Source: Guillardia theta CCMP2712 (lineage: Eukaryota; Protista; Cryptophyta). Taken from it: a stretch of DNA of 64,000 nt. The notes under the pieces were generated by a model that saw nothing but the letters and a program-made list of their open reading frames with translations, had not been told where the DNA came from and did not search any database. Of this stretch, positions 8,672 to 55,200 are shown piece after piece. How positions within the stretch are numbered: the stretch's first letter is position 1; each line of letters starts with the position of its first letter. The translations under genes and the position numbers were made by a program. The stretch lies in assembly GCF_000315625.1 (NCBI RefSeq), contig NW_005434660.1, forward strand, positions 172,711 through 236,710, read 5' to 3'.

Positions 8672-10206
8672 CGTTGGAATCGAGTGACGTGGTAGATCAG
8701 ACTTTCAGCCTAGTATCAAAGGCTGTACCGAGTCCTATCGTCAGTATCCTCCTCCTCCTCCTCCTCCCTTGCCGCGCTCCTCGCGATCTTTGCTGCTCCT
8801 ACTCAAGATTATCGTTTGCAACGGCCATTGCCGCCCTGCTTTTGATTTTCGTTTCTTTCTTCAGCCGACAGTTACAGCAGTTATATCGATGCTGGGCACA
8901 TTGATAACGGTTTTTGGGGGTGGCGGTTACAATTTTCGACTGGACCCTACCCTTGCGCCCAAGTTTTCTAGGATTTGACAGGGGGGGTTGCGCCTATGAT
9001 ACATCTACCCCTGGTGATTAGACCCAAACATCCGGTGGGGTCATACTTGCAGGGAAGGGTACACTACCCTACCCCAGAGCTCTATCCTATGGCACAGCTA
9101 TATCTTTGTACCCCATCATTCCCATCAGAATTAGTTGAAAACATAGGTAGGGTGAGAAATGGAAAGTCAAACAGAGGGGGTAGGGAGAAGTTGAGAATGT
9201 ACCTTGGGGTAGGTCAAGTGATTCCAATGGGTGGGGTTATCTACCCTACCACCTAAATGTCTGCCCCATTTTCATTTCCTTCCCATGTTGTGGTCATACA
9301 AGTGTCGGAGTAGGAGGTGGGGGGCGCTATTCCACATGGGTAGGGGTGGGGCGGCCTGGGTACGTGGTCTGCGCAGGCAAATCGGGGAGGGGTGGGTTCG
9401 CGAGCGGGAATGTCGGCGGGAGTGGAGGACAACAGCGGCACGATGGTGAGAAAACATGAAGGAGAGGAGATGAATGAAAAGGAAAGAGCATGTGAGAACA
9501 ACATTGCATGACACTTATGGGGATGAGGAAGCAGAAAGCGAAAGATAATGATCAGGAAAGATACAACAATAGAAACAGGTTCACATCCAAGCACTCTCAG
9601 TAGCAAGGTTTGAGCATACAAGACTGCAGGCATGATTGCCGAACTCGACCGCGAAATATACACAGCAGTAGTGCTGAAATCTAAGGAGATTGAGAAAGGA
9701 AAATTCTGGGTAGGCTGTTGCACAGGAGGGTAGAGAGGGCCCAAGTTGAGCTTGGGCGGCAAACAAGAATGGTGATGGCCACCTTGAGAAATACATTTGG
9801 AACAAGCTATTTAGTTGGATGACAACAAAAGATGATATGAGTCTGAAGATTGGGGCGAATGGGGCCAAACATGGAATATAACTCTCGAACAGCCTGAATG
9901 AAAGCAAAGAGGATAGGAAGAGATGGTTTTTCGTTTCCTGTAGTAATCCCTGAGTCTGTAACGAGGAGGTTCCTCGTTTGATTGCAAACTTTAGATGTAG
10001 AAGGGCAACTTTTAGAAGTGATGCTTCGGAGGCGTGCCAAACATCTAATGACGTCTTTGATCTAGGAGGCGATCCTGCGGGTCGACTCGCCGGGGTCATT
10101 TGAGAAGAAATCTGGCGCACAAGATGCCAGATCAGAACGGACCAGCTCAGATCTTTCTTCTCCTCTACTTTCTAGAATTCCGCTCCTTCCCAAGCTAGAG
10201 GTTGCT

Positions 10207-13200
10207 ATGATGGCTTCCACACAGCTTGAGGAATTCCCCTCACCGTCGTCCTACTTTCTGCATGCCAAAATGCAACATGAAAGGGCTCGACAAGATCGGC
10301 TCTCTGGTATAGTCGGGATATCCACTGAACAGGTGACTTGTTTCTCAACACGTTTGTCGAATTGTTTACCATATAAGCGCAGAAATCCAGCAAGCACGAA
10401 CCTAGCTTGAAGGCGCTTGCACGTAGAAGTATATGTCTCGCTATGAGCCACACGGAGAGCTCCGGGCGTGCTCCTAAGACTATCATAGATGAGATACTCC
10501 AATCGGAGATCTTGCTGGAAGTGTTGACGTTCTTGGATGCAAGGCATATTCTTTGTGTCATGGCAGTGTGTCGCAAGATGAAGCTGATTGCGGGAAGTAG
10601 CCATTTTTGGAGCAAAATCGGTGAAATCGAGAAGGATTGCTCTCGAGTCAATTGGGCAGCATTCAAGTTTCAAGGAGTTTTGAAGAAGAAGAAAGACTCG
10701 ATGGTTGTGAAATGCGAGAGCCGTGTTTCTGGCAAAGTGATGGTTGTCAAGAGAATCAAGAAGATGCCTTCAGTATCAGGAGACGCCTCAGATGAAGATG
10801 AGGCCGGTGCCGATCAAGGCTTCCCTGTCCGTTATCTTCGAGAGGCCTGTCTTCTCAGGGCCTGCAATCACCCCAATGTGATGAAGCTTGAATTCGTGAC
10901 ATATCATGAAGGCCAGATCGAGCTCTTTTCTGAGTTTGTCGGATTGAACGTAGAAGACTACATTTCGAGTCTTTCAGACGAATACTTCACCCGAAACAAG
11001 CAGAAGCATGAATGGGTACTTCAGCTGGGCCGATATTTTATGAAACAGGTTCTGAAGGGCATTGATTACTGTCATTCCATCGGAATTTTATTACGAGACG
11101 TGAAACCTAGGAATTTTCTGATTTCTTCCGATGGAACACTGAAGCTGACAGGGTTCGTTCTGGCTCGCTTTTCTCTTCTTCCTGAGGAACCTCTTACACA
11201 ACAAGTTGTGACGCTCTCTTACAGAGCACCGGAAATCATCCTGGGTGGAACCTATCCTGTCTACACGGCACCTGTCGATATATGGTCAGCAGGTTGTACT
11301 TTTGCCGAGATGATCACCGGCCGGACACTCTTCGAAGGAGACAGCGAGATCGGGCAGCTTCTCAAGATCTTCAAGCTACTGGGCACACCTTCAGATTGCA
11401 ACAAGTCATTCTGCTTTGAAGTCCCTTCATATATTGAGCTTCTTCCTCAGTGGCAGCCTCAGAGTCTGAGTGAAAGGCTGGAGGGCTTGTGTGACGAAGG
11501 GGTTGATCTCTTATCGCGTATGCTCTTGTACCATCCTTGTAGCAGGATTACAGCAAGGGATGCTCTGAAGCACCCTTACTTTCAAGGGGATCATGTCTGC
11601 AAGCAATCGAACTGCTCCTTGAAACGTTTGATTGGCGAGGACGAGCTGACATGTATGCGAATGCCTCAAGGATGTGAGATCAGCAGAGTCTTAGCAAGAG
11701 CTGTCGTAGCGGATGCCAAAGAAAGCTGCAGACAGCAAGAAGCTTCGCATCATACTTGTTGCGAAGCACAAGTTTGCAGGTCAAATTGTTGTGATGACAG
11801 CTCCAACGAGGCCGCTATGTGTTCCTTGTCGTATCAGAATATCTATCAATCTTACGGTGTAAATATCTTTCAGTCGTTGACCAGAAATGAGGTGAGATTT
11901 ACCGTGTTTGGCAGCTGTTTTGACAACTGACCACGATGGACGACGCAGGAGAAATTTCTGCCTTGTAATCAAGAATCGCTTCGATGTACGGAGTATCAAG
12001 CAGTGCGGAAAGATCTTGTACACTTCATCATACAAGTCATTGATGAAGACATAATGAAGCCAGAGACCTTGTATTTAGCTGTAAATTACATGGACAGGTA
12101 AGCTCGATATTGCAGATTGATTTGGGCGTCATGTTATCTCCTTGTGATGGCTTTCTGTTACAGGTTTGTGACCTCCTGCCCACGGGCGCTGCACAACATG
12201 AAACTTGTTGCTGTCGCCTGCATTCTCATCGCCTCGAAGCAAGAAGAGCTTGCTCCCCAGAGCGTGTTGAATCTAATTCTCCGAACAGAGGATACCTTTG
12301 ATGAGGTTTTACCTTTCTTCATGTCATCGTCCTCATCTGACTGGATTTCGAAGGTATTAGGCATGGAAGCAGATGTCCTGCGGGATTTAGATTACTCCTT
12401 GACACTTTGTACCCCGTGGCGCTGTTCAGAATTCTACCGATTCCACATCTTGTACGACAGGGAACTGCCGGCATCTCTCAAGAGGTTTCTAAACTAGTCC
12501 TCCCCAGATTGCTTGACTGTTTGTGTAGTATGTTTTCTCGGACTCAGCCGCTGCCGAACGACATGTGGAACTTGTCAAGGTCTCCGACTGTGATGAAACT
12601 CATTCCTTATAACATGCTTGCTTCTTCAGATATCTGATGGAGCTAGCATTGAGCGAATTCCAAGAGATTTTCACCCGTCCTTCTCAGCTTGCAGCGGCTG
12701 CCGTTATCCTTTCGATGCACAACTTTGAAAGGTAAAGTCGAGGAAAGTAGAGTTCTGCTGGAAGAGAGCTTATGAATTTGACAGCGATATCGTGGATCTG
12801 TGCTTGCAATCGCACGCAGAAAATGGAAGGCATATAGAAGAAGATGCGACTCTGCCAGTCCATGTTCAAAACATCATCCTGTACAAAATCAGGTGAACTG
12901 ATGTCGTATCGGAGACAATGGAAATCCCTGACACTGTGAAGCAGCAATCTTTTGAATAGCTCCAGTCACGAAGACAGCAGTGCGTCTTCGCAGTGGTGCG
13001 TGCACGAGGCACTCAACAACCTTGTTCAGATCATGTCAAGGTTGCAAAAGTGAGTTTGTTCGTAACGATCCAAACTTTGATCCCACGCTTTCTGCATGCA
13101 CCTATTCGCTCCTGTACCCCCTCCCCCACTTTCTCCCTCTTCCTCCCTCCCTCCCTTCCTTCGTCACATAGTTGCTGACTGACTTGTATCTACTGTTGTA

Positions 13201-13349
13201 GGTATCACAAGGCTGTCTCCGAAGACAACCCCACATACCGACGATTCTCTCACACCTCCAATATCTCCCGTCGCCCGCTGCTGCGCTCCTTGCCCAACCT
13301 TCAAGTCTCGGAGGGAAGGTTGAAAATCATCATTGCAAGCAGCAACTAA
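10207..13349 (+). CDS. F-box + CDK-like (pseudo)kinase + cyclin (N and C boxes) fusion protein
   Basis: Exon 1 10207-10332, intron 10333-10382, then exon 10383-11891. This exon encodes the F-box (LQSEILLEVLTFLDARHILCVMAVCRKMKLIAGSSHFW), a CDK fold (GFPVRYLREACLL, LRDVKPRN, LTQQVVTLSYRAPE, VDIWSAGC, LFEGDSEIGQL, RITARDALKHPYF) and the cyclin N-terminal helix (YGVNIFQSLTRNE). A phase-0 intron 11892-11948 leads to the cyclin box (VRKDLVHFIIQV..ETLYLAVNYMDRF..KLVAVACILIASKQEE..MEADVLRDLDYSL) and the C box (YLMELAL..RPSQLAAAAVILS). Likely stop at 13349. Confidence 0.88.
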
Positions 13350-13531
13350 GAGCGAGGAGATGACACTATGTTGGAAGGATTAGAAAAGGTCTACAGGCCG
13401 GAGCTCAACTTGTATTCTAGCGGGAATATTTATTGATAGATGATGAAAGTCAGATACGAACGAGATGCGAAGGAAAGCGTGCGTCTGGATGCTCTCAGCT
13501 GGGACGAATGCGAGAGTATCCGCAGGAGGGA

Positions 13532-14493
13532 TCATGAGGATTGAGCCTTCTTGTCGTTGCTGCTCGTCATCGAGTTCAAGTACGCTTTGTTCATCGCACT
13601 CCGCGCTTGCTGCGGGTCAGTCTTGGCCCGAATGATCTGAGATGGAGATCACTACGATTGTTGTGACTTTCACATCACCGTACCCGGAAGCACCGTGTGA
13701 CAATATCTCCGATGTCTCTGCAGGAACATCGTCAAGACAACAAGAAAACATCAGCCAAGGAAATGAAGCAACCTCTGTACCCAAATCTGCCACCACACGG
13801 TCAGAATGCAATGCACCGGCATGCCAGTCCTCACCTCAACTTCTGAACCTGGAGGGCCGAGAAGCAGGTCAGCTACTCGAGTAGCCGGTGCCTTGTAGAC
13901 ATTGTTTCCATCGATCTTCAACAGGATCTGCGGCATGGGCGTCATGCATAGCGAAACTGAGTTGGTTCAATCCTACATCTCCCGCAATCAACCTTCCTTC
14001 TGAAGTGGCTCCAGGGCAAACCTTCACGAGCCATTACATTCAAGGGGACGAGGAGGAGGCTAAGGGAACAACCGTGTGCACGTAGAGGCACCTTTCGCTG
14101 TTCATGGCAACGATGATCCCTATCCCAACTTTCTCCTCCTTTGAGCTCTTCGACTGCAAGGTTCTGGACCTTTCCGGCTGTGTGACCCTCTGAGCAGGAT
14201 TGCCTTCATCCAGAGCTCGGCTATGACCTGGTTTGCTCTCAGGGGGCTGACCCTGTAACCATCGTCAACTCCTTGCCGCCCTCCTCCCTCTCAGATTCAA
14301 AACAAACCGACACAGGTCAAACTCTCATGATCACTCCCCAGGGTCACGCACACACACACATCGACGCAAGCATGCTCCCTATAGGAGGCAAGAGACTGGC
14401 ACAGTGCCCTCCTCCTACCTCCTTGTCTGCTGCCGCCTTGGGCTCGCAGCATCCTATCCGCTGCGGCGTGCATATACCGGCCAGCCACTCCAT
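13532..14493 (-). CDS. Small PDZ-domain protein
   Basis: Spliced: VGIGIIVAMNSERCLYV..VCPGATSEGRLIAGD..ILLKIDGNNVYKAPATRVADLLLGPPGSEVE. Likely N-terminus MEWLAGICTPQRIGCCEPK. Confidence 0.7.
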
Positions 14494-14879
14494 TCGCCCT
14501 TGCACCCCTCAGCGTCGCGCTGGGCAGCTGAAATATAGGAAGCCTGTGATTGTGAGCGCGACTTGTTTACATTTTAACAATCATTTTTAGACTTAAGTAA
14601 AACAGTGGTACGAAGAATAGCTCATCGGAGAACCAAGAGCCGTTGATCGCCAAAAATAATTGTAAATAATTATAAGTTTTATTTATTTGTAGGGAAACGT
14701 ATCGGTATTTCCCGGAAGACTTGGAGAAATGCAAAGTTTTAAAAGTAAAAATTGGTACCAAAGGATCGATGTTTTTTTTTAATTAACATTATTTTAAACT
14801 TTGGGGGTTGAAAGAGGACAGCGAATTTCCTTCTTGATTGCCAGCATGCTGTCCTGCCCTGAGTCTTGATTAAACAACC

Positions 14880-16432
14880 ATGTGCATCATGGCGGCCTTG
14901 GTTGGGATGAGCGCGGAGTTCCCGGTGAGATGATGAAGCGACGAGAGAACGAGATGAGACGAGACAAGACGAGATGAGACGAGATGAGACGAGATGAGAC
15001 GAGATGAGACGAAACGAGACGAGACAAGACGAGATGAGACGAGATGAGACGAGATGAGACGAGACGAGACGAGACGAGATGAGACGAGATGAGATGAGAC
15101 GAGACAAGTAGAGATGAGATGAGAGTCGATATACGCGAGGGGAGTCGAAGAGGGATTTGGGATCCAAAGGAGAGCAACATATCACGACAGAGAGATTGCA
15201 GTAGAAGACTAGAATAAAGGCAAAGACTCGGATATGAAATGCTCCAGTATCAATTCTTTGTTGGGAGATGACAGGACTTGCTTTGATGTATGGATTGCAG
15301 TTCATCTTGGTTCATAATCGCGACGAGGACTGGACAAGGAAGACTTTCGATGTGCAGGACAACGGAGCTGTCATAGCGGCGATCGATAGCAGGGCAGGTG
15401 CGTCTGCCGAGGCAGGTCGAGCTCATGGTTGATGACGAACAAGGAAGGTGGAACATGGATGGGGTTGCACAAGGAGACTGCTAGATTCGCTGCGCTTACG
15501 AATGTGAGAACAAAACAAAAGGTACCCACTCCGTCCAAATCACGGGGAAGAATGGTTCAAGACTACCTCGAGAGAGGGTGATGCTAGAAATGCAAATGTG
15601 TACGAAGAGAAGTTTAAGATGACTCTTGACAACGCAGAAGCGAACAATGGGAGGACTACTATGCTTATCACACGTATATGCTCATGAGATGCTGGTGAGA
15701 TACGGAGTTGACTCTGCGAGACAGGTTGCACTGCAGCGATATCAGAGCAAGGCAACATGGCGAACCAGAAGTTTACCTTCGCACTTGTGTTCCTACTGTT
15801 GGTGGGGGAGAATGCACATGGGAAACTGTGTGTGAACGACTGGACTCTGGACACGTGTACTGTATCAGCAATGAAGAATGCAGAAGTGTAAACACAGCCA
15901 ACTTCCCGAAGTGCGCCTGGCTCAAGCAAGAGCTTGAGCGAACAATCAAATCGTTCAATGTTGAAAGCAAAGGGAAAGAAGGCGCACTGAAACTTGCAGA
16001 AGCGATGAGCATAGCGATGTCCTCTACAGTGAATTTTGCTGAGGTACGGTATATTTCAATCTTATGTTAGCACCCTCAATGCAGAACTTGTCAGGAGAGT
16101 CTACCCGATATGAGTTTTAGCCCTCTCACCAAGGAGCAGGAGACTATCTTGCAAAGGGGCCCGTACATTCACGGGCCGAGTGCAGGTAAGAATGAGGTCA
16201 GGGAGAGCTGAACATCAGCCGATAGATGCCGGCAGGTTTTGAAAGCTACGGGACTCAGACACAGACGATTGTCATTAGCAGTGCGAGCAGCAAGTCAATC
16301 TATTACTTTTGCAGGAGAACAGAAGGTTGTTCCGACAGTATCTGATTTGTTGTCTTTGCTGAAGTTGGACTCGCAGGACTCGATGCTGAACAGGCTCGGC
16401 AGACGCCCTTTGCCTGTTTCGAGGTCCAGTGA
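14880..16432 (+). CDS. TANGO2: TANGO2/NRDE-family protein (Ntn-hydrolase fold)
   Basis: MCIMAALVGMSAEFP | intron 14925-15300 | FILVHNRDEDWTRK..DSRA-GGTWMGLHKETARFAALTNVR..SRGRMVQDYL..VYCISN..YGTQTQTIVI. Shows the N-terminal MC, NRDE, GGTW, LTN, SRG and YGT family motifs. Confidence 0.88.
14940..15125. repeat. (GAGAC/GAGAT)n pentanucleotide microsatellite in TANGO2 intron 1
   Basis: More than 30 degenerate pentamer copies. Confidence 0.92.
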
Positions 16433-53504: not shown

Positions 53505-55200
53505 CTACAACGATGGGCTCGCTGGGGTTTGAAATTCAGCAGGGAGGATGCGTTGAGCTAGCGATGTGTCACTCCTGATGCTGGAAGCTCCTTCGCGCGT
53601 GATCAGATGGCGGCGCAAGCAGAAGACGCCATGGAGGTGCCGGTGCGAGGAGAGCATCTCGTCTCCATCCCATTCCTCCTCTGGTATCACCAAGTGCTTC
53701 CATCCAACCCTTCGACGGCAGCCAGCACAGGAAACATCTTTGACGACAACACCCGCAAACCTCGAGCTTCTCCTCTCCTGCAGGAACCATGTCACGTCCT
53801 CAGCATCCAGTTTCCGACTTCTTGCCTCGTCCTCCTCAATGTATGAGCCGGCGGTCATTCCGGCCACAAACACAAGGTCGCCTTCCTCCTCCTCTGGCTC
53901 CATCCCCTTCTCGTTGAGCACAGCCTGCCAGTGATTGCATTCTTACCCTAACAATCGACTTCGAGCTGTGCCAAGCTACTTACCCTGCCAGGGGCTATGG
54001 CGTTGTTGCAGTGGGAGCAGTGGATATTGCCCGATGTAATCAGCGAGTTGCACGCTTTGTCGATGATATTTAGTCTTTGCTTGCACAAAAGCGCCTCTCC
54101 TTTCTTGATAGGTCGAAAGGTTTTCTATCAAGAAACAATAGAATCATCAGTATGTAAATCTCAATGGCCCTCACAACAAGGTACCATCGTGTCGATATCA
54201 GTGAGGTTGAAATTTTCATCCCAGTTCTCTTCTGAATGCTCCAGGTTCAGCATTTCGTTTCTGCAAAACCACAGAATTACAATCACCGAACTGCAAAGAA
54301 AGCGATCTCACATAGTCAGGGCGAACCAGTTCAAATTTACACCGGGCAGGACAAACCTGGAACCTTTCTCGACAGTCAACACACCACCAACTACATCAGA
54401 TCACAGCCTCCCAACCTTGTGTTCTGCCGTCTGTGATGCCTTGACGCTGCAACGCAACAAGATTCTCCGCCTCCACATCCCCTGACTTTGACGTGACCCC
54501 CAGGTTGCAAACCTTCAGGCCCAAGAACATTCCACATTGTTCACAGCACATGTCGCAAAGACTGAAGGATAGCTCTCCATCCGAAACGAACCCCTGTTCC
54601 CCATCACGCCGTCAGCAAAGCTATCCTATCATCTTGCATGCATGACTGCCCACCAGAAGCTTCTGAATGTAAGAGTATTGCAGAATCTCGTGCTCGGACG
54701 AGGAATAGGTTGGCACAGGAATGAACGTGGTTGTTCCGAATCGAAATCCATGACCACCTTCCTTCTTATCGAGTTCTGACTCATCATCTACCTTGACACA
54801 GACAGCGACATCATAAATGAAATCTACAACAACAGTCACACATGATTGAACCCATCCCTCAATGGTCAACGCACCTGAACACATGGTGTGAACGAATCTC
54901 TTGAAAGAAACCAGCCTATGATTACACCCCATGCACGCAAAATCAAAGTCTATCAAGGGGGATATATAATCGTGGAGCTCTTTGTTGCAGAGAGCAGCTT
55001 TCTTGACGACGCCGAAGGGTAAATATGAGAAGATCTTGCATTTTACATCGGTAGGCAGGAGACCGAACAATCGGAAACCCTTAGTAACCACAGGGTTTAC
55101 CCAATAAATCGAGTCCACAGGAGAAGATCCAGAATAGACCTGAAGCGAGTGAGAGAAAAGCATCGTAAGATTAACGCGTTCATACCGTATCAGAGTGCAT
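53505..55200 (-). CDS. F-box protein with two Yippee/Mis18/CULT-type zinc-binding domains
   Basis: F-box LLPTDVKCKIFSYLPFGVVKKAALCNKELHD. Domain 1: FACMGCNHRL ... LCDMCCEQCGMFLGLK ... KGEALL. Domain 2: IHCSHCNNAI ... VKDVSCAGCRRRVGWKH ... HGVFCL. Confidence 0.72.

What the first reader, a model, noticed from the sequence alone, without database searches (positions are those of the whole stretch)
10660..11585. The fused CDK looks like a pseudokinase that keeps its docking and regulatory surfaces
Seen: the Gly-rich loop GxGxYG, including the inhibitory T14/Y15 sites, is replaced by LKKKKDSMV; DFG becomes GFV (KLTGFVLAR, Mg-binding Asp lost); HRD becomes LRD; PSTAIRE becomes PVRYLRE. The beta-3 Lys, the alphaC Glu, the activation-loop Thr (PLTQQVVTL, T160 equivalent) and the Cks-binding GDSEI motif are kept, and the frame is intact. 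Inference: loss of catalysis with retained Cks and CAK surfaces fits a scaffold or decoy that is insensitive to Wee1/Cdc25. The cyclin MRAIL patch is also diverged (VRKDLVHF), hinting at non-RxL clients.
Basis: partly seen in the sequence, partly recalled or inferred. Interest (0 to 1): 0.75.

Follow-up and report, generated by a model that had tools for sequence, protein, structure and literature searches.

The report
Conserved dead-looking CDK fused to cyclin
A cryptophyte alga (Guillardia theta) expresses one protein that joins an F-box, a CDK-like kinase domain stripped of its ATP/Mg-binding motifs and an A-type cyclin; the losses are conserved and under strong purifying selection, so this is a working pseudo-CDK, probably a recognition module of a ubiquitin ligase, not a decaying gene.

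Summary
The window is Guillardia theta nuclear DNA. Residues 74-381 (10662-11585) form a CDK1/2-like domain (E 6e-58). Its Gly-loop is LKKKKDSMV, HRD is LRD, DFG is GFV and PSTAIRE is PVRYLRE. The beta3 Lys, alphaC Glu, catalytic-loop D/K/N, T160 equivalent with its three Arg ligands, and GDSEI are kept.

It is neither an error nor decay. Transcript contigs from three studies match the DNA letter for letter. They splice the kinase exon to eight cyclin exons, giving one 794-aa F-box/pseudo-CDK/cyclin ORF. The same substitutions occur in all ~12 relatives found (Hanusia, Baffinella, metagenomes; 47-90% identity), a 100%-supported clade. Kinase-domain dN/dS is 0.03-0.13. Twenty family-invariant changes cluster in the ATP site, and the most conserved segment is the cyclin-binding helix.

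The best reading is a non-catalytic or nearly inert CDK domain, held by its own cyclin, that serves as the substrate-recognition module of an SCF ligase. This is inferred, not shown. The Cks surface is only partly kept (K237 lost, D210G invariant). MRAIL divergence is specific to the Guillardia/Hanusia clade. Residual Mg-independent activity, as in CASK, cannot be excluded.

I found no paper describing such a protein. The scan noted the fusion before on this same stretch (s1-445477).

The parts
10065..10332 (+). 5' exon (UTR, or extra N-terminal coding sequence if the in-frame ATG at 10207 is used)
   Evidence: Transcript contigs X1, X2 and X9 start at 10065 and splice 10333-10382 out, GT..AG. 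The frame stays open upstream of 10443.
10443..11891 (+). Main coding exon (aa 1-483): F-box, CDK-like pseudokinase domain, linker and start of the cyclin N-terminal helix
   Evidence: Open frame. Pfam F-box-like, F-box and Pkinase. The ATG matches the Hanusia phi start MSYTENSGK.
10494..10610 (+). F-box (aa 18-56)
   Evidence: PF12937 at 28.3 bits (cut-off 24.3) and PF00646 at 25.7 bits (cut-off 20.5). Conserved in P0001, P0003-P0009, P0011, P0043 and P0127.
10662..11585 (+). CDK1/2-like kinase-fold domain with degenerate catalytic motifs (aa 74-381)
   Evidence: phmmer E 6e-58 to CDK1/CDK2. Pkinase E 1.9e-44. In the AF2 model of the 82%-identical (90% over the kinase domain) Hanusia orthologue, pLDDT is mostly above 90 and TM is 0.89 to cyclin-bound CDK2.
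10680..10706 (+). Replaced glycine-rich loop LKKKKDSMV (no Gly, no T14/Y15)
   Evidence: The family pattern is L-[KR]-x-K-[KAR]-[DH]-S.
10824..10844 (+). PVRYLRE, the alphaC (PSTAIRE-equivalent) helix, with Arg50 and Glu51 equivalents kept
   Evidence: GFPVRYLRE is invariant in all members and is the most conserved 9-mer of the domain.
11091..11114 (+). Catalytic loop LRDVKPRN (HRD His to Leu; Asp, Lys and Asn kept)
11142..11168 (+). KLTGFVLAR: DFG becomes GFV (Mg-binding Asp lost); R150 equivalent kept
   Evidence: T-G-[FL] is present in all members.
11190..11234 (+). Activation segment PLTQQVVTLSYRAPE with the T160 equivalent (T252); W167 becomes S
   Evidence: T252, V255, V256 and T257 are invariant.
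11337..11453 (+). GDSEIG-alphaG helix and L14 loop (docking surface used by Cks1, KAP and CDC25 in CDK2)
   Evidence: The residue list comes from PMC11316097.
11949..12097 (+). Cyclin exon 2, including the MRAIL equivalent VRKDLVHF (12003-12026)
   Evidence: Cyclin_N at 27.9 bits. Splice junction 11891|11949 is present in contigs of three studies.
12164..12305 (+). Cyclin exon 3 (cyclin A K266 equivalent in IASKQEE)
   Evidence: Cyclin_N at 29.3 bits. Alignment to cyclin A2, E 4e-15, via the Hanusia orthologue.
12354..12484 (+). Cyclin exon 4 (E295 equivalent in GMEADVL)
12529..12579 (+). 51-nt exon 5
   Evidence: Present in transcript contigs and keeps the frame.
12630..12731 (+). Exon 6, start of the second cyclin fold
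   Evidence: Cyclin_C at 22.5 bits, cut-off 22.
12785..12892 (+). Exon 7
12945..13049 (+). Exon 8
13202..13349 (+). Last coding exon up to the stop codon at 13347-13349

Best explanation
The gene encodes one 794-aa polypeptide: an F-box, a CDK1/2-derived kinase-fold domain, a linker of about 80 residues, and an A/B-type cyclin with both cyclin folds. The kinase domain is a conserved pseudokinase. It has lost the Mg-binding DFG Asp and every glycine of the phosphate-binding loop, and the ATP pocket has been remodelled in a fixed, family-wide way. It keeps the elements that shape a cyclin-bound, T-loop-phosphorylated CDK: the alphaC helix, the K33-E51 pair, hydrophobic substitutes for the regulatory spine, T160 with its three Arg ligands, the P+1/activation-segment platform, and most of the GDSEI-alphaG docking face.

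The most likely mechanism has three inferred steps.
1. The tethered cyclin binds the pseudo-CDK in cis.
2. This produces a permanent, catalytically silent look-alike of an active CDK-cyclin complex.
3. The F-box plugs this module into Skp1-Cul1, so that proteins which dock on CDK-cyclin (Cks-bound phosphoproteins, CDK inhibitors or regulators, cyclin-docking clients) are ubiquitinated rather than phosphorylated.

Shown here: the architecture, expression as one spliced transcript, the motif states, family-wide conservation and purifying selection. Inferred: lack of catalysis, cis binding of the cyclin, SCF assembly and the identity of clients.
For: Identity and motifs:
- E 6e-58 to CDK1/2 with HRD as LRD, DFG as GFV and PSTAIRE as PVRYLRE.
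- Pfam finds F-box, Pkinase and Cyclin_N; Cyclin_N and Cyclin_C are found exon by exon.
- The cyclin box is closest to cyclin A2, E 4e-15, with the CDK-contacting Lys and Glu kept.

One transcript:
- Contigs of three studies join all exons through nine GT..AG introns with no base differences.
- The frame is open for 794 aa.

Conservation:
- The Hanusia phi orthologue has the same F-box, kinase and Cyclin_N architecture at 82% identity.
- About 10 further members at 42-52% identity carry the same G-loop, [LM]RD, TG[FL] and PVRYLRE.
- A genomic metagenome contig shows the same F-box/kinase-then-cyclin order.
- The family is monophyletic at 100% SH-aLRT. Its sister is another F-box/kinase/cyclin fusion that also lacks the DFG Asp.

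Selection: NG86 dN/dS is 0.03-0.13 in the kinase domain. The cleanest pair gives dN 0.020 and dS 0.384.

Pattern of change:
- Twenty family-invariant changes sit at positions invariant in canonical CDKs. They are concentrated in the ATP site: G13K, G16S, A31V, V64M, F80S, D86N, Q131R, A144T, D145G.
- The most conserved segment is the cyclin-binding helix GFPVRYLRE.

Structure: the AF2 model of the Hanusia protein has a confident CDK fold, and its best PDB matches are all cyclin-bound CDK2.

Genomic context: G. theta has two canonical CDKs, two CKS genes and Skp1.

Precedents: cyclin F is an F-box protein that uses a cyclin box as SCF substrate receptor without a CDK (PMC9699750). SCF-Skp2 recruits p27 through Cks1-CDK2-cyclin A (PMC11316097).
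Against: - No biochemical data exist.
- K33, E51, D127, K129 and N132 equivalents are all invariant. This is unexpected for a purely structural domain and is compatible with nucleotide binding or weak catalysis. Predicted pseudokinases such as CASK and HER3 turned out to have activity (PMC3014569).
- The F-box lacks the canonical Leu-Pro (LQ, LT or LS instead) and scores only modestly.
- Cis docking of the cyclin could not be examined. No coordinates or PAE were available, and pTM 0.62 is ambiguous.
- The Cks contact K237 is not kept.
- The MRAIL patch carries an acidic residue in Guillardia and Hanusia, so RxL-type docking may be lost there.
- No CDI/KRP-type inhibitor was detected in the genome, although that search was uninformative.
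Confidence: 0.6

Rival explanations
1. Atypical but active kinase. The domain still binds ATP, with the Lys/Arg-rich loop replacing glycine-loop and Mg contacts to the phosphates. It phosphorylates clients at a low rate without the DFG Asp, so that one protein both creates a phosphodegron and delivers it to SCF.
For: - The beta3 Lys, alphaC Glu, catalytic Asp, Lys and Asn, the T-loop Thr and the P+1 residues are invariant.
- The hinge (E-F-V) and L134 equivalents are kept.
- The basic residues in the G-loop are themselves conserved.
- CASK, IRAK2 and HER3 were predicted dead yet show activity. STRADalpha and ILK bind ATP with altered G-loops and use acquired basic residues for the gamma-phosphate (PMC3014569).
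Against: - All three G-loop glycines and the DFG Asp are absent in every member.
- No family-conserved compensating acidic residue appears near the active site.
- A31V, V64M and F80S change the adenine pocket.
- The sister lineage P0043 additionally lost the catalytic Asp (HRN), which suggests catalysis was already dispensable.
Confidence: 0.2
2. Stoichiometric decoy or sponge that is independent of ubiquitination. The dead CDK-cyclin module titrates Cks, CAK, phosphatases or inhibitors away from the real CDKs. The F-box serves only for the protein's own turnover or for Skp1 binding outside an SCF.
For: - Docking and regulatory surfaces are retained.
- Expression looks low: the raw-read run gave little depth over the gene. 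This is weakly compatible with a regulator.
- Pseudokinases often act as scaffolds or substrate sponges (PMC13727655 abstract).
Against: - The F-box is conserved in all full-length members and in the sister lineage. This argues that it is integral to function.
- A low-abundance protein is a poor stoichiometric sponge.
Confidence: 0.15
3. Recent decay, pseudogene, or a sequencing or assembly artefact.
For: Only the unusual motifs themselves. The NCBI gene model covers just the kinase part (303 aa).
Against: - The frame is intact.
- RNA contigs from three studies are identical to the DNA.
- The same substitutions occur in relatives down to 47% identity.
- dN/dS is about 0.05.
Confidence: 0.02

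Closest known systems
CDK1/CDK2 (cell-cycle CDKs, CMGC group)
   Same: Best sequence and fold match (E 6e-58; TM 0.89 to cyclin-bound CDK2). It shares 53 conserved positions with canonical CDKs, including K33, E51, R50/R126/R150, D127, K129, N132, T160, APE and GDSEI.
   Different: No GxGxxG and no T14/Y15. HRD is [LM]RD, DFG is TG[FL], PSTAIRE is PVRYLRE, and the gatekeeper Phe becomes Ser. The domain is covalently fused to an F-box and to its own cyclin.
Cyclin F (FBXO1), substrate receptor of SCF(cyclin F)
   Same: It combines an F-box with a cyclin box in one polypeptide. Cyclin F uses the cyclin fold for substrate recognition rather than for kinase activation (PMC9699750).
   Different: Cyclin F has no kinase domain and binds no CDK. 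Here a CDK-like domain sits between the F-box and the cyclin. The cyclin box is closest to cyclin A, and no orthology to cyclin F was shown. The fusion is most likely an independent invention.
SCF(Skp2)-Cks1-CDK2-cyclin A complex that recruits p27
   Same: An F-box protein, a CDK and an A-type cyclin cooperate to present a client to Skp1-Cul1 (PMC11316097). The cryptophyte protein unites three of these parts in cis, and G. theta has CKS genes.
   Different: In the animal complex the parts are separate proteins, the CDK is active and Skp2 carries LRRs. Here there are no LRRs and the CDK is degenerate.
Scaffold pseudokinases that hold an active-like conformation (STRADalpha, ILK) and low-activity 'pseudokinases' (CASK)
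   Same: Loss of G-loop glycines and/or the DFG Asp, with retention of an ordered, active-like fold. ATP binding without canonical contacts is possible (PMC3014569).
   Different: These belong to different kinase groups (STE, TKL, CAMK). None is CDK-derived or fused to a cyclin or an F-box.
Engineered cyclin-CDK fusions (fission yeast Cdc13-Cdc2 and similar)
   Same: They show that a covalently linked cyclin-CDK pair can fold and function as a unit (papers listed, e.g. PMC4319789).
   Different: They are synthetic, ordered cyclin then CDK, and catalytically active. This protein is natural, ordered CDK then cyclin, and has a degenerate active site.

Membership tests
Cyclin-dependent kinase (CDK1/2-type, catalytically competent) | Protein-kinase fold with best similarity to CDK1/2/3 | tested here: met
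   Pkinase E 1.9e-44; CDK1/2 E about 6e-58; Foldseek TM 0.89 for the orthologue model.
Cyclin-dependent kinase (CDK1/2-type, catalytically competent) | Glycine-rich loop GxGxxG with T14/Y15 | tested here: not met
   LKKKKDSMV; there is no Gly in any of the family members.
Cyclin-dependent kinase (CDK1/2-type, catalytically competent) | DFG Asp (Mg binding) and the HRD motif | tested here: not met
   DFG is GFV, or TG[FL] family-wide. HRD is [LM]RD with the Asp kept.
Cyclin-dependent kinase (CDK1/2-type, catalytically competent) | PSTAIRE-type cyclin-binding helix | tested here: inconclusive
   PVRYLRE keeps P45, R50 and E51 equivalents and is invariant in the family. Cyclin binding itself was not tested.
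Pseudokinase (sequence definition) | Kinase fold lacking at least one of the beta3 Lys, HRD Asp or DFG Asp | tested here: met
   The DFG Asp is replaced by Gly in all members.
Pseudokinase (sequence definition) | Conserved under selection rather than decaying | tested here: met
   dN/dS 0.03-0.13; a monophyletic family at 47-90% identity.
Pseudokinase (biochemical definition) | No phosphotransfer activity | not testable with these tools
   This needs kinase and nucleotide-binding assays.
F-box protein / SCF substrate receptor | F-box domain above the curated threshold | tested here: met
   PF12937 at 28.3 bits against 24.3; PF00646 at 25.7 against 20.5. Conserved in relatives.
F-box protein / SCF substrate receptor | Binds Skp1 and assembles with Cul1 | not testable with these tools
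   Skp1 genes exist in the genome. Binding is untested.
A/B-type cyclin | Cyclin_N and Cyclin_C folds | tested here: met
   Exon-wise, Cyclin_N scores 27.9 and 29.3 bits and Cyclin_C 22.5 bits. Cyclin A2 E 4e-15 via the orthologue. The sister protein P0043 has both domains at E 6e-33 and 2e-12.
A/B-type cyclin | MRAIL hydrophobic patch | tested here: not met
   VRKDLVHF in Guillardia and LRRELVHF in Hanusia, but canonical MRKILVEW in other family members.
Cyclin F (FBXO1) | F-box plus cyclin box, with no kinase domain and no CDK partner | tested here: not met
   A kinase domain lies between the F-box and the cyclin. This is functional resemblance only.

The most novel reading that the evidence does not exclude
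A natural, single-chain 'dead CDK-cyclin complex' wired to an F-box. This would be an SCF ubiquitin-ligase receptor that recognises its clients by mimicking an activated CDK-cyclin(-Cks) holoenzyme. Proteins that normally dock on CDK-cyclin (inhibitors, regulators, multisite phospho-substrates) would be degraded instead of phosphorylated. It would be the first CDK-family pseudokinase and the first natural CDK-cyclin fusion with a defined role, and it appears to have been invented in cryptophytes.
Probability: 0.4. Interest if true: 0.8.

Novelty: new variant of a known kind. Interest (0 to 1): 0.7.

Why it matters
CDKs are the model of a kinase that depends on a partner for activity. I found no CDK-derived pseudokinase and no natural CDK-cyclin fusion in the literature I could search. 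This family shows that the CDK-cyclin module can be kept for its shape and docking surfaces alone and recombined with the ubiquitin system.

It gives a natural experiment on three questions:
- which CDK surfaces matter independently of catalysis (alphaC, the pT160 clamp, GDSEI-alphaG);
- how cyclin F-like and Skp2-Cks1-CDK2-like recognition can arise;
- how cell-cycle control is wired in cryptophytes, which must coordinate a host nucleus, a nucleomorph and a plastid.

It also corrects the public gene model, which annotates only a 303-aa 'cyclin-dependent kinase'.

Tried and rejected
- Apicomplexan origin was my first guess from base composition. The 100% match to Guillardia theta GUITHDRAFT_157280 rejected it.
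- Sequencing error or pseudogene: rejected.
- Paralogue expansion in G. theta: rejected. The gene is single-copy, and the next hits are canonical CDKs at 42% identity.
- G. theta versus Hanusia dN/dS could not be computed, because only the Hanusia protein is held. G. theta versus the metagenome members is saturated at synonymous sites, so I used closer metagenome pairs.
- A profile word-search with the family alignment found only one additional fragment, P0127. The other roughly 50%-identical short hits are canonical CDK fragments.
- The CDI/KRP search in the genome was blank but uninformative, since the controls were also silent.
- The AF2 model gives no coordinates or PAE here, so cis docking of cyclin on the kinase could not be measured.
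- Literature searches for natural CDK-cyclin fusions, CDK pseudokinases and Guillardia CDKs returned only synthetic fusions and unrelated papers.
- Joined spliced model: I concatenated the exons only inside a script to check frame continuity and length. I did not send the joined protein to any search or fold tool. Searches were done exon by exon by reference or with database orthologues.
Full report
**What is there**

The window is nuclear DNA of the cryptophyte alga Guillardia theta CCMP2712. The kinase part of the ORF is 100% identical to NCBI protein GUITHDRAFT_157280, a 303-aa model that covers only the kinase domain. The long ORF at 10407-11930 carries Pfam F-box-like and F-box domains (28.3 and 25.7 bits, both above their cut-offs) and Pkinase (E 1.9e-44). 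An ORF just downstream in the same frame carries Cyclin_N.

**Gene model and expression**

Transcript-like contigs from three independent studies (X1, X2, X9) lie on 10065 to about 13412 without a single base difference. They skip nine GT..AG introns of 44-152 nt.

With these junctions the frame is open from the ATG at 10443 to the stop at 13347-13349, giving 794 aa. An in-frame upstream ATG at 10207 is also possible. The ATG at 10443 matches the start of the Hanusia phi orthologue.

Scanned exon by exon, exons 2 and 3 hit Cyclin_N (27.9 and 29.3 bits) and exon 6 hits Cyclin_C (22.5 bits). The 'fused CDK' is therefore real at the RNA level: one transcript encodes F-box, CDK-like domain, a linker of about 80 residues, and a two-fold cyclin.

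I concatenated exons only inside a script to check the frame. For those I used single exons by reference and the database orthologue P0001.

**Checking the observation**

phmmer against PDB sequences gives CDK1, CDK2 and CDK3 as best hits (E about 6e-58). The printed alignments and the MAFFT alignments fix the following equivalences.

| CDK2 element | In G. theta | Window coordinates |
|---|---|---|
| I10-V18 (IGEGTYGVV) | LKKKKDSMV | 10680-10706 |
| A31-K34 (ALKK) | VVKR | 10743-10754 |
| PSTAIRE | PVRYLRE | 10824-10844 |
| HRDLKPQN | LRDVKPRN | 11091-11114 |
| KLADFGLAR | KLTGFVLAR | 11142-11168 |
| THEVVTLWYRAPE | TQQVVTLSYRAPE | within 11190-11234 |
| GDSEIDQL | GDSEIGQL | from 11337 |

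**Is it decay, error or a conserved state?**

- The gene is single-copy in G. theta. The genome also holds two canonical CDKs with GEGTYGVVYKA loops.
- Hanusia phi has an orthologue that is 82% identical overall and 90% identical in the kinase domain. It has the same F-box, Pkinase and Cyclin_N architecture.
- About ten further proteins are 47-59% identical to G. theta in the kinase domain. They come from Baffinella frigidus, metagenomes and SRA assemblies.
- All members carry the same non-canonical motifs:
  - G-loop L-[KR]-x-K-[KAR]-[DH]-S-x-V;
  - V-[VA]-K-R;
  - invariant GFPVRYLRE;
  - [LM]-R-D-x-K-P-R-N;
  - T-G-[FL]-[AV]-L-[AG]-R;
  - T-[QR]-x-V-V-T;
  - G-[DE]-S-E-I-G.
- A genomic metagenome contig has the F-box/kinase ORF followed by a Cyclin_N ORF on the same strand.
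- In a maximum-likelihood tree the family is one clade (SH-aLRT 100) on a long stem. Its sister (support 89) is P0043, another F-box/kinase/Cyclin_N/Cyclin_C protein whose motifs read GEGRYCSV, HRN and SFT, so it also lacks the DFG Asp. This was the quick IQ-TREE search; the careful one did not finish.
- A profile search with the family alignment in the 5.8-billion-protein collection added only one more fragment, and scores then drop to canonical CDKs. The family is small and, by its named members, cryptophyte.

**Selection**

Nei-Gojobori estimates over 231 kinase-domain codons are shown below.

| Pair | dN | dS | dN/dS |
|---|---|---|---|
| P0009 vs P0008 | 0.020 | 0.384 | 0.05 |
| P0003 vs P0009 | not listed | >1.5 (near saturation) | 0.08 |
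| P0004 vs P0005 | not listed | >1.5 (near saturation) | 0.03 |
| P0003 vs P0004 | not listed | >1.5 (near saturation) | 0.13 |

Comparisons involving G. theta itself are saturated at synonymous sites. Hanusia nucleotides were not available.

**What was changed and what was kept**

I compared ten family members with 37 canonical CDKs.

Fifty-three positions are conserved and identical in both sets. In CDK2 numbering they include:
- K33, R50, E51, R126, D127, K129, N132 and R150;
- T160, V163, V164 and T165;
- the APE motif;
- G205, S207, E208 and I209.

Twenty positions are invariant in the family yet differ from the canonical invariant residue.
- Most line the ATP site: G13K, G16S, A31V, V64M, F80S (the gatekeeper), D86N, K88E, Q131R, A144T and D145G.
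- Others lie in the alphaC helix (T47R, A48Y) and in the GDSEID motif (D210G).

The most conserved nine-residue stretch of the whole domain is GFPVRYLRE, the cyclin-binding helix. Next come LFEGDSEIG, RAPEIILGG and the T-loop.

This is a coherent, fixed remodelling of the nucleotide pocket, with preservation of the surfaces that define a cyclin-bound, T-loop-phosphorylated CDK. It is not random erosion. The HRD His to Leu/Met change and the DFG Phe to Phe/Leu state keep hydrophobic residues at the regulatory-spine positions (from general kinase knowledge). That fits a stable active-like conformation.

An AlphaFold2 model of the Hanusia protein was built on a 51-sequence alignment.
- The kinase domain has pLDDT mostly above 90.
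- The first cyclin fold has pLDDT about 80-86.
- A confident long helix sits in the linker.
- pTM is 0.62.
- All of the 50 best PDB matches shown are CDK2 or CDK3 chains, nearly all from cyclin A or cyclin E complexes (TM about 0.89, rmsd about 2 A).

This is compatible with an alphaC-in state but is not proof. No coordinates were available to inspect domain contacts.

**Docking surfaces**

The CDK2-cyclin A-CDC25A paper (PMC11316097) describes the relevant contacts.
- The GDSEID-alphaG region is a shared site for Cks1, KAP and CDC25A.
- Cks1 inserts into a groove formed by I209, F213, F240, P241 and W243.
- Cks1 hydrogen-bonds E208 and K237.
- CDC25A uses D206, D210, F213 and R217.

The states in the family are as follows.

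| CDK2 residue | State in the family |
|---|---|
| E208, I209, P241, W243 | kept |
| F213 | Leu or Phe |
| F240 | varies |
| K237 | Ile or Leu |
| D210 | invariantly Gly |
| R217 | Lys or Arg |

The Cks/KAP face is therefore largely but not fully kept, and GDSEI alone is not evidence for Cks binding. G. theta does encode two CKS proteins and Skp1.

The cyclin box is closest to cyclin A2 (E 4e-15). It keeps the Lys (ASK) and Glu (ME) that contact the CDK in cyclin A (the residue roles are from general knowledge). The MRAIL patch carries an acidic residue in Guillardia and Hanusia (VRKDL, LRREL). It is canonical (MRKILVEW) in the P0003 and P0009 lineages. That divergence is clade-specific and not a family property.

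**Mechanism**

The best-supported reading is a pseudo-CDK locked by its own cyclin into a CDK-cyclin look-alike, which acts as the recognition domain of an SCF ligase through the N-terminal F-box.

Two known systems make this plausible.
- Cyclin F is an F-box protein that uses a cyclin box for substrate selection and binds no CDK (PMC9699750).
- SCF-Skp2 recruits p27 via Cks1-CDK2-cyclin A (PMC11316097).

The cryptophyte protein would merge these parts in cis.

The main rival is an atypical, weakly active kinase. The catalytic-loop Asp, Lys and Asn, and the K-E pair, are invariant. The review PMC3014569 documents predicted pseudokinases that proved active (CASK, HER3). It also documents ATP binding by STRADalpha and ILK despite G-loop changes, with acquired basic residues contacting the gamma-phosphate. 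The conserved Lys/Arg-rich loop here could play that part. Against this rival, no conserved compensating acidic residue was found, and the sister lineage has also lost the catalytic Asp.

A ubiquitin-independent decoy is a second rival. Decay and artefact are excluded.

**Novelty**

Full-text searches returned only engineered cyclin-CDK fusions and unrelated work. They covered natural CDK-cyclin fusions, CDK-type pseudokinases, F-box/kinase/cyclin architectures and Guillardia CDKs. Within that library the protein is undescribed.

I class it as a new variant of known kinds (pseudokinase, F-box receptor, cyclin), with an unprecedented combination. The scan had already noted the fusion on this same stretch (s1-445477). 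I reached the SCF-receptor idea before seeing that title and tested the architecture independently.

Noticed in passing
L016:3001-4851 (protein P0119); also P0116: Kinase-cyclin fusions without an F-box, with intact HRD and D[LW]G and a GxGxY[GS] loop, so apparently active natural CDK-cyclin fusions. P0119 sits in a gene-dense, seemingly intron-free 75-kb metagenome contig next to a UDG gene and a DUF5757 protein. The contig may be viral (giant virus) or from an AT-rich protist.
   Followed up: partly
L009 (protein P0043, 743 aa): Sister lineage of the family with the full F-box, kinase, Cyclin_N and Cyclin_C architecture but a different pattern of loss: G-loop GEGRYCSV half intact, HRD as HRN, DFG as SFT. 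This suggests the DFG Asp was lost early and the other motifs were lost independently.
   Followed up: partly
window 10443-11891 versus the public annotation: The NCBI model GUITHDRAFT_157280 (303 aa, named cyclin-dependent kinase in UniRef) covers only the kinase domain. The F-box and all cyclin exons are missing from the public protein.
   Followed up: yes
window 11892-11948, 12098-12163, 12306-12353: The first three coding introns are 57, 66 and 48 nt, all multiples of three. Retaining intron 1 would end the protein at the stop at 11928-11930, giving an F-box/pseudokinase-only isoform. The Hanusia transcript P0001 appears to retain the equivalent of G. theta intron 4, so its last roughly 45 residues are not homologous.
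   Followed up: partly
window 13415-14254, minus strand: A convergent neighbour gene whose 3' end (poly-A signal in reads at about 13415) abuts or overlaps the 3' UTR of the fusion gene. It has CT..AC (minus-strand GT..AG) introns and a 12-nt insert (micro-exon) within the 13719-13835 joint in two runs but not in a third.
   Followed up: no
protein P0010 (Baffinella frigidus): The activation segment GFALGRFASLPAEPLTRE appears three times in tandem in the deposited protein. This is either a gene-model or assembly artefact or a real duplication.
   Followed up: no
window 14739-15305, minus strand: An ORF made of SSRLISS/SSHLVSS-type repeats (a tandem repeat region). I did not examine it.
   Followed up: no
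window 53505-55200: The scan's index lists a second unusual F-box protein (F-box plus Yippee/CULT-like domains) in the same window. I did not examine it.
   Followed up: no
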